Sequence record: OZ196212.1
Reading direction: 5' to 3' (one strand)
Length of the DNA: 64,000 bases
Part shown: one piece after another, positions 14,722 through 29,930 of the stretch
Layout: every line of letters begins with the position of its first letter
Numbering within the stretch: the stretch's first letter is position 1
The notes under the pieces: model-generated
The model's database searches: none
What the model was told of the DNA's origin: nothing
Seen by the model: the letters and a program-made list of their open reading frames with translations, nothing else
Program-made: the position numbers and the translations under genes

Positions 14722-15246
14722 CTATCTGCGTCCTTTAGTTTTGTTTCTTTTTAGTTTTCGTTTGAGCTTGCGAACTTCTTTACGCTTCGCGATTTTATCA
14801 GCTCGTCGAACCGCGTCATAATCCGCAGCACAAGACGCTGCAAACGCATCGGGCTTGAATACTGGCTCTTGACCCACATATCCGAAGATCGTGCCCTTAG
14901 CTTCGTTATACGCGACGCTAGACTTGTGTTTAGGGTCTGGGTTAATGTCAACGTGTACTTCAAAGCCGCGAGGGCCGCACATTGGCTTAACTTTCAACGC
15001 ACATTCACCTGCTTTGTATACTTCGTTCATCAAGCGGCTACGAATACCATCAGTAGATGACATATAGGCTTTCTCAGTTTCGATTGTTTTGAATACTTGA
15101 GCGCCTTTACTGCCTTCCAAGTGAATTATGATTACAGTCGCGTAACTGATCATATCACTTTTTCGTTTACTGTCACACCCAACATAGATCGTGCTACTCG
15201 GGTGACTATTTTGAATCGCTGTTTCTACAGCTTCCCAATCGAACAT
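14722..15246 (-). CDS. YkuK/DUF458-like RNase H-fold protein
   Basis: IYVGCDS...YATVIIIH...LMNEV...EVHVDIN...AASCAAD. Confidence 0.75.
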   Translation of the reverse strand: MFDWEAVETAIQNSHPSSTIYVGCDSKRKSDMISYATVIIIHLEGSKGAQVFKTIETEKAYMSSTDGIRSRLMNEVYKAGECALKVKPMCGPRGFEVHVDINPDPKHKSSVAYNEAKGTIFGYVGQEPVFKPDAFAASCAADYDAVRRADKIAKRKEVRKLKRKLKRNKTKGRR

Positions 15247-15295: not shown

Positions 15296-16729
15296 TTATA
15301 AAGCGTATCGGTCGACACCGACAGTCTTCAGCATGATTTTCACTGGCTCAAGCTCACCACCCAACAGCGACGTTAGAATTGAAGGGCTGCAACCCGACAC
15401 TAACGCTGTGTTCGCTTCACCTGATTTAACAGGCACGTTGTCTAGACGACCACGCAAGTTCCAGAACACTAGTTGCGGCATTTCGTAGCCCGCGTTCGCA
15501 TACATGACTTTGATTGCATCGAAGTTCGTAGTGTTACGAGTATGCCAGCCACCGCCAGTACGAGCTTGATCGAATTCCATATCGCTCATGATAAGCAATT
15601 TGGTTGGCATTTCGTCTTGCGACAAGTTTGCCGTACGAGCGCGTTCAAGAAGAACTTCGAAGCATCGTGTGATGTTCGTGCTCATATCTTCGCCAGATCG
15701 TTGCATGTTGTCAAGACGCGACTTCAAGCTATCACCCGTCAACTTGTGAAAGTGCGGATCACTTGAGAACGAAATGAATTGATCTTTGAAGATACCCTCA
15801 TTACGTTCAGCGACGTAGATGCCAAGAGACATCGCAACTTCTTTACAAGTCACACTACCACCGTGTTCACCGTTGATACCACAGCCCATAGAGCCAGAAA
15901 CATCAACAACTGGAATCACGCGCTCGTCAGAGCCTTCCATGTAGTTCGGTAGAGCTTTCCATTGCTCATTTGCAACACGATGGTCACCCATTTTAACGCT
16001 GCGAACAACATCGTATGGGTAAACAGCACCTGCATTGATCTTCGCTTCACCTTTCACAAGCGATGTGATGTACTCACCGTATGCAGATTCAGCGTTACGA
16101 CCGAATGCTTTCTGATAGCGTGCAGACGCTACAGATGGCAGTTTGCCGAACTCGATCTCGCCCCAATTACGAGCACACATCTTCTGTTCAACAGTGTCAG
16201 ACAAAAGAGAGATCACTTTACGCCACTGCTTCGCGTTTACACCAATCGACTTGATTGTGCGCTTGAACACGACTGCGTTTTTGCTGCGCTCACGAGGAAA
16301 CCACTTAGCAGCAAGCGCGTTTTTGTCATTGACAATCGCGTGTGTCCACAGAGTGATAGCATCAGCTTCAAGAGAAGTACCGAACGCAGATACTAAGTCA
16401 TCGAAACGACCAAGTTCTGGGATCTTGCGCATAACTAGACGCGCTACTTCTGGTTGTTCTTTACACAGACGTGCAAAGATTTTGCGGAAAGTACCGCGCT
16501 CACCTGCACCGCCACGCACGTCGCGAGACCATAGCAAGATGCGAGTTGCAAGCTCAGGGTTTTCACCGAATGCGCGATTAAACGCAGTTAGTGACTGATC
16601 ATTACCGCGCATAGCGCCGATAGTGAAGAACAAGTTTAGACACTCGTTACCCGAAGTGCTGTGTGTTACTGCACCGTTTGCTGTACGTGAATCGTTAGAT
16701 TGCATAGCGTTCATAAATAAACTAGTCAT
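15296..16729 (-). CDS. DUF2828 plus vWA domain protein (TROVE/Ro60-like architecture)
   Basis: TANGAVTHSTSG..LNLFF, RDVRGGAGER, LAAKWFPRE, GAVYPYDVV, MIDAS DVSGSM and SDMEFD; ATG 16729 has a GGAG RBS. Confidence 0.85.
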   Translation of the reverse strand: MTSLFMNAMQSNDSRTANGAVTHSTSGNECLNLFFTIGAMRGNDQSLTAFNRAFGENPELATRILLWSRDVRGGAGERGTFRKIFARLCKEQPEVARLVMRKIPELGRFDDLVSAFGTSLEADAITLWTHAIVNDKNALAAKWFPRERSKNAVVFKRTIKSIGVNAKQWRKVISLLSDTVEQKMCARNWGEIEFGKLPSVASARYQKAFGRNAESAYGEYITSLVKGEAKINAGAVYPYDVVRSVKMGDHRVANEQWKALPNYMEGSDERVIPVVDVSGSMGCGINGEHGGSVTCKEVAMSLGIYVAERNEGIFKDQFISFSSDPHFHKLTGDSLKSRLDNMQRSGEDMSTNITRCFEVLLERARTANLSQDEMPTKLLIMSDMEFDQARTGGGWHTRNTTNFDAIKVMYANAGYEMPQLVFWNLRGRLDNVPVKSGEANTALVSGCSPSILTSLLGGELEPVKIMLKTVGVDRYAL

Positions 16730-16765: not shown

Positions 16766-17356
16766 ATGTTTCATATTGTATATCAAATAACAAATTTAAT
16801 AAACAACAAAATTTACGTCGGTAAGCATTCAACCGAAAACATTCATGACGAATACATGGGTTCGGGAAAGCTTTTGCTCAGAGCCATTAAAAAGTATGGC
16901 AAGGAGAATTTCACAAAAGACATACTGTTCGTATCATTAGACGAAAAGGATGCATATAAAGCAGAACATGAGATCGTGAATGAAGATTTTGTTCTCCGTG
17001 AAGACACATATAATCTCAAAGTTGGCGGTCTTGGTGGATCATCAGGAATAGAATCTCCATGCAAAGGTCGTCAACTGAGTGAAGATACTAAACTAAAAAT
17101 GAGAAAAAGTAAACAATTTTCTCAAAAACATTTAGATTATCTCTCAACTAAATTATCTGAGTACAACAAATCTAGACAAGGTGTTCAAAGAGACGATCTA
17201 AAGGGTAACTCAAACCCAATGCATCGAGGTAATTGGCATACACCCCACGGAATATTTGAAACATCAAGCGAAGCAGCGTGTGCCATAAAATGTAGTCAAT
17301 CAACAATTGTTAGACGTTGCAAAAATCCAAATTTTGAGGATTGGTACATCAAATAA
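16766..17356 (+). mobile_element. free-standing GIY-YIG homing endonuclease (Seg-like)
   Basis: IVYQITNLINNKIYVGKH...YMGSG; AT-rich; opposite orientation to its neighbours. Confidence 0.85.
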
Positions 17357-20990: not shown

Positions 20991-21182
20991 CAGACATTCG
21001 TGAACAGTTTTAAAGTCTTTCGCATTAATCACATTTGACTTTCATGTTTAACGATACATGAATCCCTACCAACAAGTTGATAGTCGTACCTTCGAGTTTA
21101 TTGCTTTAAGTCACCGAGAATGCGGCTATGCGTTACTCTATCTCTTATTTAAGTTTTGTTAGTTGGTTGCTGTACAATGTCT
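20991..21182 (-). ncRNA. structured RNA closed by a CAGCAA-motif stem (element A)
   Basis: AGACATT-GTACAGCAA...ACG-AATGTCT-G; internal hairpins. Confidence 0.65.
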
Positions 21183-21192
21183 TTGCAAAATT

Positions 21193-22608: not shown

Positions 22609-23045
22609 CAGATATTAACGTATTTAATCAGCACACGGGCTTGACACCACATTGTTTGTGGTCTACGTGAAGAACCTCTGCACAACAATCCCGCTCTAAT
22701 TGCGTTATGTGGTGACTGTCACGAGGAATCTAGTCTTCTTTAAGTGCCTTTCGGCTGTAATAAAGTACAGACAATAACGAAGTGTTTTTTCGTCTTTTAC
22801 ATAAATCGCAGTTGACTATCTTGTTACTCTAACAAGCAAGTATCGACTACCTCAGCGTCGCGCCTAGACTGTGTATTTCTACACGCCACATCTTTCGTTA
22901 CAAGTCTCGACCTAGCACGTTGTTGCTGTGCTGAACGTCTCGAACCCACGCTAAGACCTAATCATTGTTTTAGTAGATTAGTAGTTTGGTTGCTGCATAT
23001 TGTCTTACGTGACAGTCAAACACACAATGCCGAAACAATATGCCG
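22609..23045 (-). ncRNA. large nested structured RNA containing a YrlA-like module (element B, 22768-23005)
   Basis: AGACAATA/TATTGTCT stem with GCAGCAA; 10-bp inverted repeat 23008-23017/22714-22723; T-loop GGTTCGAG. Confidence 0.55.
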
Positions 23046-23652: not shown

Positions 23653-23764
23653 CTGAGTGTCGTTTATACCGCGTCTCCAAGACCTGAGATACCAACTCAG
23701 CATGGGATTCGAACCCACCGACGTTTCTTGTATCGAAAGAAATTTTAAATTGCTGTAAACACTC
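23653..23764 (-). ncRNA. circularly permuted tRNA mimic (YrlA-like, element D)
   Basis: GAGTGT-TTACAGCAA...T arm GTGGG-TTCGAAT-CCCAT, then CTGAG/CTCAG hairpin...ACG-ACACTC-AG. Confidence 0.7.
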
Positions 23765-23773
23765 TTAGTATTT

Positions 23774-25834: not shown

Positions 25835-25909
25835 TGGCGGACGTGGAGAATTTCGAAATCTCGACCCCGGTGTTAACAGCACCGCGCTCTGCCTCTGAGC
25901 TACACATCC
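25835..25909 (-). tRNA. tRNA-Asn(GTT)
   Basis: cloverleaf, G73, CCA. Confidence 0.93.
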
Positions 25910-27085: not shown

Positions 27086-27200
27086 TGGCTGACCGATGCG
27101 GGACTCGAACCCACGACCACGTGCTTAACAGGCAATTAGAAATGCGGTAGCGATACTTATCAATATCATTTACGTGCTCTACCACTGAGCTAATCGGTCA
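27086..27200 (-). tRNA. tRNA-Asn(GTT)-like RNA with a 38-nt insertion in the anticodon stem
   Basis: D arm, intact CT-GTT-AA loop, T arm, GCCA; insert 27134-27171. Confidence 0.75.
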
Positions 27201-29105: not shown

Positions 29106-29228
29106 TGGTGGAGAGTGCGGGATTCGAACCACGCGGCCAAAAGATTTACTTAGTTAGTGTTTGCAGCATGAATACTTGACAATATTCTGTCAACGTTCTT
29201 TTGCTCTACCAGACTGAGCTAACTCTCC
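29106..29228 (-). ncRNA. CCA-ended tRNA scaffold with motif insert in place of the anticodon loop (T1)
   Basis: GGAGAGT/ACTCTCC-A-CCA, D arm, AAAGA/TCTTT stem enclosing ~52 nt. Confidence 0.7.
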
Positions 29229-29234
29229 ATTTAA

Positions 29235-29374
29235 AACACATTGAGCAGGGTGCAGGATTCGAACCTGCGTCACGATCTTAGAATGATATGCTGTTTGGGT
29301 TGCTGAATACAAGCTATACAACTTGCGTTTATGCTACGTGTGCTAGCCACTACACCAACCCTGCTCAATGTGTT
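29235..29374 (-). ncRNA. tRNA mimic with 17-bp extended acceptor and motif insert (T2)
   Basis: D arm, T arm GCAGG-TTCGAAT-CCTGC, no CCA, ATTCAGCAACC. Confidence 0.75.
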
Positions 29375-29607: not shown

Positions 29608-29753
29608 TAGAGCATATTGGTCGTGCGTACTAGAATCGAACTAGTCCTACGATCTCCTAATGATATGCGTTATTGGTTGCTGAATACTTACTTGTCAGTA
29701 AGCGTTATGCTACGTGTGCTGCCACTACACCAACGCACGACCAATATGCTCTA
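29608..29753 (-). ncRNA. tRNA mimic with 21-bp extended acceptor and motif insert (T3)
   Basis: paralogous to T2; T arm ACTAG-TTCGATT-CTAGT. Confidence 0.75.
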
Positions 29754-29754
29754 G

Positions 29755-29909
29755 ATTATTTAATTTGCGTGCTACTTGCACGACGACTGAGCGAATTATA
29801 ACTCAGCTAGTTTTTGTTCGAGAACTCGGCGGCTAAGCCTATTCACTGCTTGTCAGAACTTAGAACTGACCTCATGTTTTCATTGCGTCTAACACGCAAA
29901 TTAAATAAT
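29755..29909 (-). ncRNA. 155-nt structured RNA
   Basis: 17-bp terminal helix ATTATTTAATTTGCGTG; internal GTCAG/CTGAC and CTGAG/CTCAG hairpins. Confidence 0.55.
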
Positions 29910-29920
29910 TCTTATCTTCA

Positions 29921-29930
29921 GTAAAGAGCA
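29921..29930 (-). promoter_or_regulatory. boxA-like antitermination site
   Basis: TGCTCTTTAC vs rrn boxA TGCTCTTTAACA, in the leader of the RNA island. Confidence 0.55.

What the first reader, a model, noticed from the sequence alone, without database searches (positions are those of the whole stretch)
27086..27200. tRNA-Asn with an intact anticodon but a 38-nt motif insert inside the anticodon stem
Removing 27134-27171 restores the CGTGC-CTGTTAA-GCACG arm. The insert folds as TGATAT-TG-ATAA-GTATCG-CT-ACCGCAT, a variant of the family motif closed by AAATG/CATTT. The acceptor is 8 bp. A normal tRNA-Asn exists at 25835, so this copy is free to take on another role. It may be an intermediate in turning a tRNA into a Y-like RNA, or bait for Asn-specific anticodon nucleases (inference).
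Basis: partly seen in the sequence, partly recalled or inferred. Interest (0 to 1): 0.8.

Follow-up and report, generated by a model that had tools for sequence, protein, structure and literature searches.

The report
tRNA-Asn mimic carrying Ro-protein motif
This is a conserved phage RNA with a complete tRNA-Asn shape whose anticodon stem is split by a hairpin and short motif; in many other phages that motif lies right next to the gene for a Ro60-like RNA-binding protein, so it is most likely a Y-RNA-like partner RNA and not a broken tRNA.

Summary
Window 27199..27090 (- strand) is a full tRNA cloverleaf (Rfam tRNA 49.1 bits). It has a 38-nt insert between anticodon-stem nucleotides 28 and 29, and an intact CUGUUAA (Asn) loop.

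It is the orthologue of KVP40 'tRNA-Pseudo-3'. It is neither an assembly artefact nor a decaying pseudogene:
- Acceptor, T stem, insert hairpin and the split stem all covary.
- In 25 diverged relatives the split helix is 96% paired, with both-sided changes at all three pairs.

The insert is a 6-9 bp hairpin followed by a UACAGCAA-like motif (CUACCGCAU here). That motif is the most enriched word just downstream of a widespread phage gene family (DUF2828/DUF7788, phrog_850). The window carries this gene at 15296-16729. Its model matches only Ro60 structures at the top. Seventeen of 37 loci found with an RNA-only pattern have this gene 135-970 nt downstream.

My best reading (about 0.6) is a non-permuted, tRNA-shaped Y-RNA analogue that docks the phage Ro60-like protein and displays an anticodon loop. 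The anticodon differs between phages, so a bait or adaptor role is possible but untested. Splicing is not excluded.

The parts
27090..27199 (-). Whole tRNA-shaped RNA (type A; orthologue of KVP40 tRNA-Pseudo-3), acceptor to discriminator
   Evidence: Rfam tRNA 49.1 bits; orthologue alignment A1; family alignment A4
27135..27172 (-). 38-nt insert between anticodon-stem nt 28 and 29
   Evidence: Direct reading; position fixed by KVP40 and D479 orthologues and 25 relatives
27151..27168 (-). Insert hairpin UGAUAUU-GAUA-AGUAUCG (7 bp including two G.U pairs)
   Evidence: compensatory changes in KVP40 and D479; a hairpin of 4-9 bp (mostly 6-9) with different sequences is found in 24 of the 25 relatives
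27142..27150 (-). Degenerate copy (CUACCGCAU) of the family motif UACAGCAA, directly 3' of the hairpin
   Evidence: the motif is enriched next to Ro60-like genes
27120..27134 (-). Distal anticodon arm: UGC (29-31), loop CUGUUAA (27131-27125; anticodon GUU 27129-27127), GCA (39-41), then C42 G43, which pair with C27174 and G27173
   Evidence: split helix 96% paired, all three pairs change on both sides
15296..16729 (-). Ro60-fold protein gene (DUF2828 + DUF7788, phrog_850 'RNA-binding protein'), proposed protein partner
   Evidence: Pfam; PHROG 1e-160; AF2 model pLDDT 79; top four Foldseek hits are all Ro60
29109..29228 (-). Paralogue B: long tRNA-like RNA, contiguous 5-bp anticodon stem, 52-nt loop holding hairpin + AUGCUGCAAAC
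   Evidence: Rfam tRNA 49.8 bits
29244..29364 (-). Paralogue C: CG|insert with hairpin + UAUUCAGCAAC|AUC-AUUCUAA-GAUCG; flanks extend the acceptor helix
29621..29739 (-). Paralogue D: same plan as C, loop AUUAGGA; flanks extend the acceptor helix to about 17 bp
25835..25909 (-). Ordinary tRNA-Asn(GUU) of the same cluster
   Evidence: ARAGORN; Rfam 53.2 bits

Best explanation
The element is a functional, tRNA-derived non-coding RNA. It is a non-permuted analogue of the tRNA-like Y RNAs that partner Ro60.

**Shown**
- It keeps every tRNA feature.
- Its anticodon stem is opened after bp 28:42 into a three-way junction that carries a hairpin plus a short single-stranded motif.
- The distal 3 bp and a canonical 7-nt loop (anticodon GUU) are preserved.

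**Inferred from genomic association**
- The hairpin plus motif is the docking site for the phage's own Ro60-fold protein (window 15296-16729).
- The tRNA body would supply processing, stability and a tRNA-shaped surface with a chosen anticodon loop.

**Inferred, weaker**
- The resulting RNP would use that tRNA-like module to engage tRNA-recognising host or phage factors, as adaptor or decoy, in counter-defence.
- The reason for that guess is that a member of the same protein family (Bas63 gp130) is reported to counter the Ppl defence system.
For: **1. Selection on structure**
- Window versus KVP40, VS1 and D479 show compensatory changes in the acceptor, the T stem and the insert hairpin.
- D479 also shows U29:A41 changed to A29:U41.
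- In 25 non-redundant relatives, found with a pattern that leaves the anticodon arm free, the split helix is 96% paired. Both-sided changes occur in 14, 8 and 10 sequences, and the acceptor is 100% paired with 7/7 pairs covarying. Shuffles and slid controls score far lower.

**2. Insert plan is shared**
- The plan is a 6-9 bp hairpin immediately followed by UACAGCAA-like sequence.

**3. The motif is tied to a protein gene**
- In 80 diverse loci holding a homologue of the window protein, [AU]CAGCAA on the gene strand occurs 65 times in the first 500 nt downstream. Other 500-nt bins hold about 6.
- A de novo 7-mer scan ranks CAGCAAA, TACAGCA and ACAGCAA first, at p about 1e-31 to 1e-34.

**4. 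The reverse test holds**
- 17 of 37 loci found by the RNA pattern alone have the protein gene starting 135-970 nt downstream on the same strand.
- These include Asn-type copies with the identical UGCCUGUUAAGCACG arm.

**5. The protein has the Ro60 fold**
- The top four Foldseek PDB hits are Ro60 (phage phiLo 9l5y, Xenopus 1yvr, 9nep), with E 1e-7 to 7e-6 and TM 0.51-0.60 over the full length.

**6. Link to known Y-like RNAs**
- In mycobacteriophage Calm the gap after the 'Ro-like RNA binding protein' gene holds three stem+CAGCAAU RNAs.
- One of them is a YrlA-like RNA (Rfam YrlA 39.8 bits, E 1e-6).

**7. Experimentally studied relative**
- Bas63 gp130 is 45% identical to the window protein.
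- Three motif RNAs lie in the tRNA cluster after it.
- The preprint 10.1101/2024.10.10.617714 reports that gp130 counters Ppl and guesses at tRNA-like Y RNAs.
Against: - No binding, expression or processing data exist for this RNA or this protein.
- The window copy has a degenerate motif (CUACCGCAU; KVP40 has CUCCAGCAC). Every copy that sits next to a Ro-like gene has a perfect CAGCAA.
- In the window the protein gene is about 10.4 kb away, not adjacent. The link therefore rests on homology with the adjacent cases and on paralogues C and D, which carry UAUUCAGCAAC.
- The Ro60 relation is at fold level only. Sequence profiles do not reach Ro60 (E 0.17).
- The 80 loci are related phages, so the p-values overstate independence.
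- One near-identical phage (6E35.1a) has a G-to-U change that breaks a T-stem pair.
- The exact 2+3 bp stem and canonical loop would also fit a precursor that is spliced.
Confidence: 0.6

Rival explanations
1. It is an intron-containing pre-tRNA-Asn. The 38-nt insert is cut out and the halves are sealed, for example by an unknown endonuclease plus phage RNA ligase, with the Ro-like protein possibly helping. The product would be a working second tRNA-Asn.
For: - Removal of the insert restores a perfect 5-bp stem and 7-nt loop in 23 of the 25 aligned relatives (28 of the 30 real entries).
- The loops keep U33, A37 and A38.
- That KVP40-type phages carry RNA ligases is from my own knowledge.
Against: - Position 28/29 inside a stem is not a known bacterial or phage intron site.
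- 38 nt is far too small for a group I core, and Rfam finds no ribozyme.
- I drew no bulge-helix-bulge, and I know of no splicing endonuclease in phages (own knowledge).
- The same motif occurs in RNAs that are not tRNA-like at all, so it has a role of its own.
- Paralogues C and D and their orthologues have loops of 7-9 nt.
- Neither the discriminator nor an encoded CCA is conserved.
Confidence: 0.12
2. It is a stand-alone decoy or bait for a host anticodon nuclease or other anticodon-loop reader of tRNA-Asn, and works without the Ro-like protein.
For: - The Asn loop and stem are identical in window, KVP40 and the diverged L011/L012 copies.
- Relatives show many anticodons, mostly with U36 A37, and UUU is the commonest.
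- L012 (GUU) and L106 (UCU) differ at positions 34 and 35, while the loci are 97% identical.
Against: - No nuclease is identified.
- D479 has C33 instead of U33.
- This does not explain the conserved hairpin plus motif, or its tie to the Ro-like gene.
- It is compatible with the best explanation as a downstream role, rather than a true alternative.
Confidence: 0.15
3. It is a decaying pseudo-tRNA, as the database labels 'tRNA-Pseudo-3' and 'tRNA-OTHER' imply: a tRNA-Asn duplicate disrupted by an insertion, with no function.
For: - It is annotated as a pseudogene in KVP40 and 6E35.1a.
- ARAGORN does not call it.
- A normal tRNA-Asn exists nearby.
Against: - Covariation is seen in every helix, including the insert hairpin and the split stem.
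- The architecture is kept in phages whose acceptor and hairpin sequences are entirely different.
- It shows ordered synteny with the Ro-like gene.
Confidence: 0.03
4. It is a translating tRNA-Asn with an extra arm.
For: All tRNA elements and the GUU anticodon are present.
Against: - An arm leaving the stem at 28/29 would sit where the ribosomal P site contacts the anticodon stem (established knowledge; inference).
- The discriminator varies between A and G among orthologues, although G73 is an AsnRS identity element (own knowledge).
- Near-identical bodies carry different anticodons.
Confidence: 0.05

Closest known systems
YrlA / bacterial and phage Y RNAs with Ro60 (Rfam RF02553; Chen et al. 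2014, PMC4201824; phage phiLo Yrl1/Yrl2, PMC12135203)
   Same: - A small RNA with a tRNA-like module is encoded on the same strand near a Ro60-fold protein gene.
- A short conserved motif lies next to a helix.
- In mycobacteriophage Calm, a YrlA-like RNA carrying the CAGCAA motif follows a gene of the same protein family as the window's.
   Different: - YrlA is circularly permuted: its ends form the Ro-binding stem, its acceptor is closed by a loop, and it has no anticodon loop. Its motif is GNCGAA.
- Here the tRNA order is normal, the acceptor is open, a full anticodon loop is kept, and the motif (UACAGCAA-like) sits in an insert inside the anticodon stem.
- The protein is DUF2828/DUF7788, not Pfam TROVE.
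- No YrlA hit covers the element.
KVP40 tRNA-Pseudo-3 (and Pseudo-4, Pseudo-5), annotated in the 2003 KVP40 genome
   Same: Direct orthologue at the syntenic place: 85.7% identity over 95 nt, with the same insert.
   Different: The records only label these as pseudo or 'other' tRNA, or as tRNA-Val or tRNA-Ile where software read the hairpin loop as an anticodon. I found no description of the split stem, the motif or the protein link in the papers searched.
Bas63 gp130, Ro60-like counter of the Ppl defence system (preprint 10.1101/2024.10.10.617714)
   Same: - Same protein family (45% identity).
- The gene sits directly upstream of the phage tRNA cluster.
- The authors guessed that some 'tRNAs' may be Y RNAs.
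   Different: - No RNA partner was identified there.
- The motif RNAs I find in Bas63 are stem + GUUUACAGCAA hairpins (one with a T arm), lying between annotated tRNAs. They are not split-stem tRNAs.
Dictyostelium Class I RNAs (Rfam RF01414; PMC7919456)
   Same: A short terminal stem is followed at once by CCUUACAGCAA. Phage RNAs next to the Ro-like gene (GGUUCC-UUACAGCAA...GGAACC) give a sub-threshold hit to this model: 28.2 bits against a gathering score of 41.5.
   Different: - Class I RNAs are eukaryotic, 42-65 nt, and have no tRNA body.
- The hit is below threshold.
- The window element has only a degenerate motif.
- Common descent or a shared protein partner is not shown.
tRNA introns (bacterial group I in the anticodon loop; archaeal bulge-helix-bulge introns, including non-canonical positions)
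   Same: An insertion interrupts the anticodon arm, and removing it restores a normal tRNA.
   Different: - The size is wrong for a group I intron.
- No ribozyme hit was found.
- No bulge-helix-bulge motif was found.
- The motif also occurs outside tRNAs.
T4 stable RNAs C and D (rnaC, rnaD)
   Same: Small stable RNAs of unknown role in the tRNA cluster of a related phage. rnaC ends with a T arm and an acceptor-like helix.
   Different: There is no recognisable similarity and no exact motif; rnaD has ACAGCAG near its 3' end. Homology was not tested further.

Membership tests
tRNA (Rfam RF00005) | Cloverleaf with 7-bp acceptor, D arm, T arm with GUUCGA-type loop; score above the gathering threshold | tested here: met
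   49.1 bits against a gathering score of 29. All helices can be read directly.
tRNA (Rfam RF00005) | Contiguous 5-bp anticodon stem closing a 7-nt loop | tested here: not met
   The stem is split 2+3 by a 38-nt insert. The model skips 49 nt and ARAGORN makes no call.
tRNA (Rfam RF00005) | Aminoacylation and use in translation | not testable with these tools
   Only indirect evidence: the discriminator varies between A and G among orthologues, and CCA is not encoded in the window copy.
YrlA / Y RNA-like (RF02553) | Match to the covariance model (permuted tRNA-like domain flanked by a terminal Ro-binding stem) | tested here: not met
   No hit on 27090-27199. The only window hit (28.2 bits against 69, at 29170-29296) joins the T arm of one RNA to the D arm of the next. 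Chen et al. warn of exactly this artefact.
YrlA / Y RNA-like (RF02553) | Encoded near, and on the same strand as, a Ro60 gene | tested here: inconclusive
   Same strand, but about 10.4 kb from the Ro60-fold gene in the window. The distance is 135-970 nt in 17 of 37 related loci.
YrlA / Y RNA-like (RF02553) | Bound by Ro60 | not testable with these tools
   Needs RIP/CLIP or EMSA.
Ro60 (for the proposed partner protein) | HEAT-repeat ring plus vWA domain fold | tested here: met
   AF2 model pLDDT 79, pTM 0.75. The top four Foldseek hits are all Ro60, TM 0.51-0.60.
Ro60 (for the proposed partner protein) | Pfam TROVE domain or sequence-level similarity to Ro60 | tested here: not met
   Pfam gives DUF2828 + DUF7788 only. 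phmmer and a profile against PDB do not reach Ro60 (E 0.17).
tRNA intron | Group I catalytic core, or a bulge-helix-bulge at the exon-intron borders | tested here: not met
   The insert is 38 nt. No Rfam intron or ribozyme hit at E up to 5. No BHB could be drawn by inspection.
tRNA intron | Precise excision in vivo | not testable with these tools
   Needs RNA-seq or RT-PCR.
Dictyostelium Class I RNA (RF01414) | Terminal 6-bp stem followed by the 11-nt motif CCUUACAGCAA; score above threshold | tested here: not met
   No hit in the window. A related phage RNA (L021) reaches only 28.2 bits against 41.5.

The most novel reading that the evidence does not exclude
**Proposed system.** Phages from many lineages carry a so far undescribed RNP system.
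- The lineages include KVP40-like, Felix O1-like, mycobacteriophages and many uncultured phages.
- The system pairs a Ro60-fold DUF2828 protein with partner RNAs marked by a helix followed by UACAGCAA.
- One subclass of these RNAs is an otherwise complete tRNA that holds the motif in a split anticodon stem and displays an exchangeable anticodon loop.

**Proposed role.** The loop would aim the RNP at particular tRNA-reading host factors, such as anticodon nucleases or modification or repair enzymes, as part of counter-defence.

**Possible wider link.** The same motif in Dictyostelium Class I RNAs may mark the cellular counterpart of this pairing.
Probability: 0.3. Interest if true: 0.9.

Novelty: new variant of a known kind. 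Interest (0 to 1): 0.8.

Why it matters
- **Function for old annotations.** The 'pseudo-tRNAs' carried in KVP40-type genome annotations since 2003 would get a function.
- **A candidate RNA partner.** A very large phage protein family would get one. More than 7,900 homologues were found, and about 700 phage records carry it. One member already has a counter-defence phenotype.
- **A new way to build a Y-like RNA.** The route would be inserting the protein-binding motif into the anticodon stem of an intact tRNA, rather than permuting the tRNA.
- **A concrete hypothesis.** Variable anticodon loops on a constant body suggest how phages might aim an RNP at tRNA-directed host functions, and this can be tested.
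- **A search handle.** The motif is a simple way to find such RNAs in other genomes.

Tried and rejected
- **Assembly artefact:** rejected. The element is identical in 17 further phage genome records and is conserved in diverged orthologues.
- **YrlA membership:** rejected. There is no hit on the element, and the weak window hit is a tandem T-arm/D-arm artefact.
- **AAAUG/CAUUU closing helix:** not kept in orthologues.
- **Alternative pairing ACCGC/GUGGU:** this came from the D479 minimum-energy fold and is not kept in KVP40 (by inspection).
- **PF04308 RNase H-like gene as a core partner:** it follows the Ro-like gene in the window and in L023, but it is found in only 2 of 80 loci.
- **gp57B as a handle for diverse loci:** it returned only two close relatives.
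- **T4 rnaC/rnaD as relatives:** no evident similarity.
- **Sequence-level link of the protein to Ro60:** not found. Only the fold search gives it.
- **Existing Rfam family for the RNAs beside the Ro-like gene:** none at the gathering threshold in 10 loci.
- **Literature:**
  - The 2003 KVP40 paper is not held.
  - The supplement of Chen et al. is not held.
  - No paper links DUF2828 to an RNA.
  - Motif-string searches returned only unrelated papers.
- **MotA-box-like DNA element on the opposite strand:** considered and dismissed. The motif is strand-specific, lies inside covarying RNA helices, and occurs in phages that are not T4-like.

Full report
**1. What the window is**

The region matches KVP40-like giant vibriophages. 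It is 100% identical to Vibrio phage D491s and its siblings, and about 77% identical to KVP40 over the aligned parts. A cluster of 26 ARAGORN tRNAs lies on the - strand between 21.2 and 28.7 kb.

**2. The observation**

Read on the - strand, 27199..27090 has these parts:
- a 7-bp acceptor;
- U8 A9;
- a D arm, GCUC-AGUGGUA-GAGC;
- a variable loop, UGGUC;
- a T arm, GUGGG-UUCGAGU-CCCGC;
- discriminator A.

Between C27 G28 and the rest of the anticodon arm lie 38 extra nucleotides (27172..27135). After them come UGC-CUGUUAA-GCA-CG. Deleting the insert therefore gives a perfect 5-bp stem and a 7-nt loop with anticodon GUU.

Rfam's tRNA model scores the element 49.1 bits while skipping 49 nt. ARAGORN misses it.

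An ordinary tRNA-Asn is at 25835-25909. The 3' half of the element resembles a tRNA-Asn of another Vibrio phage (hit H82).

**3. Not an artefact and not decay**

The element is identical in 17 further phage genome records and 99.2% identical in one more. It is the syntenic orthologue of KVP40 'tRNA-Pseudo-3'. The same element is labelled tRNA-Val or tRNA-Ile in other records, because software read the insert hairpin loop as an anticodon.

Across window, KVP40, VS1/CZ01/nt-1 and D479:
- The acceptor changes at six of seven pairs and stays fully complementary.
- The T stem covaries.
- The insert hairpin covaries (GAUAU/GUAUC, GAUAC/GUAUC, GAUUC/GAAUC).
- D479 carries U29-to-A together with A41-to-U.

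**4. A family in the window**

Three more long tRNA-like RNAs lie upstream: B (29228..29109), C (29364..29244) and D (29739..29621). KVP40-type phages have five such RNAs.
- All carry, in the anticodon arm, a hairpin followed by a short conserved string. This is UAUUCAGCAAC in C and D, AUGCUGCAAAC in B and CUACCGCAU in A.
- C and D are split at the same place as A: CG|insert|AUC-loop-GAUCG.
- Their distal loops vary in sequence, and in length from 7 to 9 nt, between phages.
- Further motif copies lie between tRNAs at about 23757, 22990, 22929 and 21173.

**5. The same architecture in unrelated phages**

I scanned IMG/VR with a pattern that fixes only part of the D arm and the variable-loop/T-arm region, and demands 40-70 nt between them. 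It returned 41 loci. After removing two tandem-tRNA false positives and redundancy, 25 RNAs were aligned (A4).
- 23 of the 25 aligned RNAs have the plan CG | linker - hairpin - motif - linker | N29-31 - loop - N39-41 - CG with full 3-bp complementarity (in one search, 28 of the 30 real entries do).
- Counted on the alignment, the split helix is 96% paired. All three pairs change on both sides (14, 8 and 10 sequences; three to four pair types each).
- The acceptor is 100% paired, with all seven pairs covarying.
- None of 500 shuffles reaches the observed covariation score, and partners slid by 1-3 columns drop to 34-46% paired.
- The hairpins are 6-9 bp, have unrelated sequences, and are followed within 0-3 nt by UACAGCAA-like strings.
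- The loops are canonical (mostly C/A32 U33 N N U36 A37 A38), but the anticodon differs: GUU, UCU, CCU, UCC, GAU, GCU, UAU, UUU (five times), GGU, UGU, AUU and GCA.
- Loci L012 and L106 are about 97-98% identical over about 7.7 kb. Their RNAs differ at anticodon positions 34 and 35, GUU versus UCU.

**6. The protein link**

In the first diverged Asn-type copies (L011-L020), a 518-aa ORF begins about 400 nt downstream on the same strand. Pfam calls it DUF2828 + DUF7788, with a weak VWA match.

The window encodes a homologue at 15296-16729 (-):
- 35% identity, E 4e-87;
- the same Pfam domains;
- phrog_850 'RNA-binding protein', 1e-160.

An AlphaFold2 model built on 25 homologues has pLDDT 79 and pTM 0.75. 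Its four best PDB matches are exclusively Ro60: phage phiLo (both chains of 9l5y), Xenopus, and Ro60 with misfolded pre-5S RNA. E is 1e-7 to 7e-6 and TM is 0.51-0.60 over the whole length. Isolated vWA domains follow far behind. Sequence methods do not see Ro60, so this is a Ro60-fold protein, not a Pfam TROVE member.

The family is very large: at least 7,932 hits and about 700 phage records. SEA-PHAGES annotators already call the mycobacteriophage members 'Ro-like RNA binding protein'.

**7. Two-way association between motif and gene**

- **Forward.** In 80 diverse IMG/VR loci chosen only for the protein, [AU]CAGCAA on the gene strand occurs 65 times in the first 500 nt after the gene, against about six per 500-nt bin elsewhere. 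An unbiased 7-mer scan of the 600 nt downstream ranks CAGCAAA first (58 observed, 6.6 expected, 43 of 80 loci), then TACAGCA and ACAGCAA, at p 1e-31 to 1e-34. These loci are related, so the p-values are optimistic. The typical RNA there is a 6-bp stem followed at once by UUACAGCAA, often in two tandem copies.
- **Reverse.** Of 37 loci found only by the tRNA-like RNA pattern, 17 have the protein gene starting 135-970 nt downstream on the same strand.
- **Local density.** In L012, eight copies of the motif, several in tRNA-like RNAs, fill the 1.4 kb before the gene.
- **No curated family.** No Rfam family covers these RNAs at the gathering score.

**8. Bridges to what is known**

- **Mycobacteriophage Calm.** The 360-nt gap after the 'Ro-like RNA binding protein' gene holds three stem+CAGCAAU RNAs. 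The middle one is a YrlA-like RNA (Rfam YrlA 39.8 bits, E 1.4e-6, below the gathering score of 69) whose terminal stem is followed by UAGCAGCAAU. In this protein clade, therefore, the motif sits where Chen et al. place the presumed Ro-binding GNCGAA motif in YrlA.
- **Bas63 (phage JohannRWettstein).** Its gp130 is 45% identical to the window protein and sits directly before the tRNA cluster, which holds three AGACC-GUUUACAGCAA...GGUCU RNAs. A preprint reports that gp130 is Ro60-like, counters the Ppl defence system, and might use tRNA-like Y RNAs. No partner RNA was defined there.
- **Phage phiLo.** Canonical phage Ro60 with Y-like RNAs and host PNPase has been shown for phiLo.

**9. Reading**

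Topologically, YrlA is a tRNA opened at the anticodon loop and closed at the acceptor. The present RNAs keep the tRNA order and place the motif in a side arm of the anticodon stem, retaining the anticodon loop.

- **Conclusion.** I conclude that the finding is a member of a non-permuted, tRNA-shaped class of Y-like RNAs.
- **Shown.** The structure, its conservation, and the genomic coupling of motif and gene.
- **Inferred.** The docking of the Ro60-fold protein on the hairpin plus motif.
- **Weaker.**
  - The use of the displayed anticodon loop as a specificity module (adaptor or decoy) is a weaker inference.
  - It rests on anticodon diversity and the L012/L106 pair.

For the window copy itself, two cautions apply: the motif is degenerate, and the gene is 10.4 kb away.

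**10. Rivals**

- **Splicing.**
  - For it: the exact restoration of a tRNA on deleting the insert, which makes it the main rival.
  - Against it: the insert position, the insert size, the lack of any ribozyme or bulge-helix-bulge, the motif's life outside tRNAs, and the variable discriminator and CCA.
- **Plain pseudogene.** Contradicted by covariation.
- **Translating tRNA.** Unlikely on steric grounds (inference).

**11. Side observation**

One phage RNA beside the Ro-like gene gives a sub-threshold hit to the Dictyostelium Class I RNA model (28.2 bits against 41.5).
- The defining features of Class I RNAs are a short terminal stem followed by an 11-nt motif; the published account gives its invariant positions and the Rfam model consensus reads CCUUACAGCAA.
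- One of four proteins pulled down with a Class I RNA, DDB_G0281243, has no known function.
- Whether that protein is a DUF2828 protein could not be checked here.

Noticed in passing
window 29109-29228, 29244-29364, 29621-29739 (- strand): Three more long tRNA-like RNAs (110-121 nt) carry the same hairpin + CAGCAA-type motif in the anticodon arm. In C and D the flanks extend the acceptor helix to about 15-17 bp. This is unlike a normal RNase P substrate.
   Followed up: partly
window about 23690-23772, 22985-23010, 22915-22945, 21160-21185 (- strand): Further copies of the motif lie in gaps between tRNA genes: GUUUACAGCAAU, AUAUGCAGCAACC, CACAGCAAC and UGUACAGCAACC. The first is followed by a hairpin and a T arm. 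They are probably additional small motif RNAs.
   Followed up: partly
window about 29760-29930 (- strand): A stretch of about 150 nt upstream of RNA D is closed by AAUUUGCGUG / CACGCAAAUU and has internal hairpins. KVP40 has the same plan with different closing sequences (AAAUGUGCG / CGCACAUUU). It is a possible further structured RNA.
   Followed up: no
window 14722-15246 (- strand): A PF04308 'RNaseH_like' ORF directly follows the Ro60-fold gene, as in locus L023. The pairing is seen in only 2 of 80 other loci, so it is not a general partner.
   Followed up: yes
L021:11830-11890; L024-L037 just downstream of the Ro-like gene: Phage RNAs of the form 6-bp stem + UUACAGCAA resemble Dictyostelium Class I RNAs (RF01414; 28.2 bits, below threshold). 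An unknown protein (DDB_G0281243) co-purifies with a Class I RNA. A shared protein family is conceivable but unchecked.
   Followed up: partly
L012:2786-3754 and L136:1095-1973: A Band-7/SPFH protein gene lies a short way upstream of the Ro-like gene, both in an uncultured phage and in mycobacteriophage Calm. This may be a conserved neighbour.
   Followed up: no
window 29170-29296 (- strand): A weak Rfam YrlA hit (28.2 bits against 69) is produced by the T arm of RNA C followed by the D arm of RNA B. This is a tandem artefact, not a YrlA.
   Followed up: yes
L002:1590-1699 (Vibrio phage 6E35.1a): The otherwise identical copy has G-to-U in the 5' strand of the T stem (GUUGG versus GUGGG), which breaks one pair. 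It is either a sequencing error or a tolerated variant.
   Followed up: no
window 16766-17356 (+ strand): A GIY-YIG (SegE-like) homing-endonuclease ORF lies on the opposite strand, right next to the Ro60-fold gene.
   Followed up: no
L008:3054-3172 (T4 rnaD): T4 stable RNA D has ACAGCAG close to its 3' end, one base off the motif core. No other resemblance was noted.
   Followed up: no
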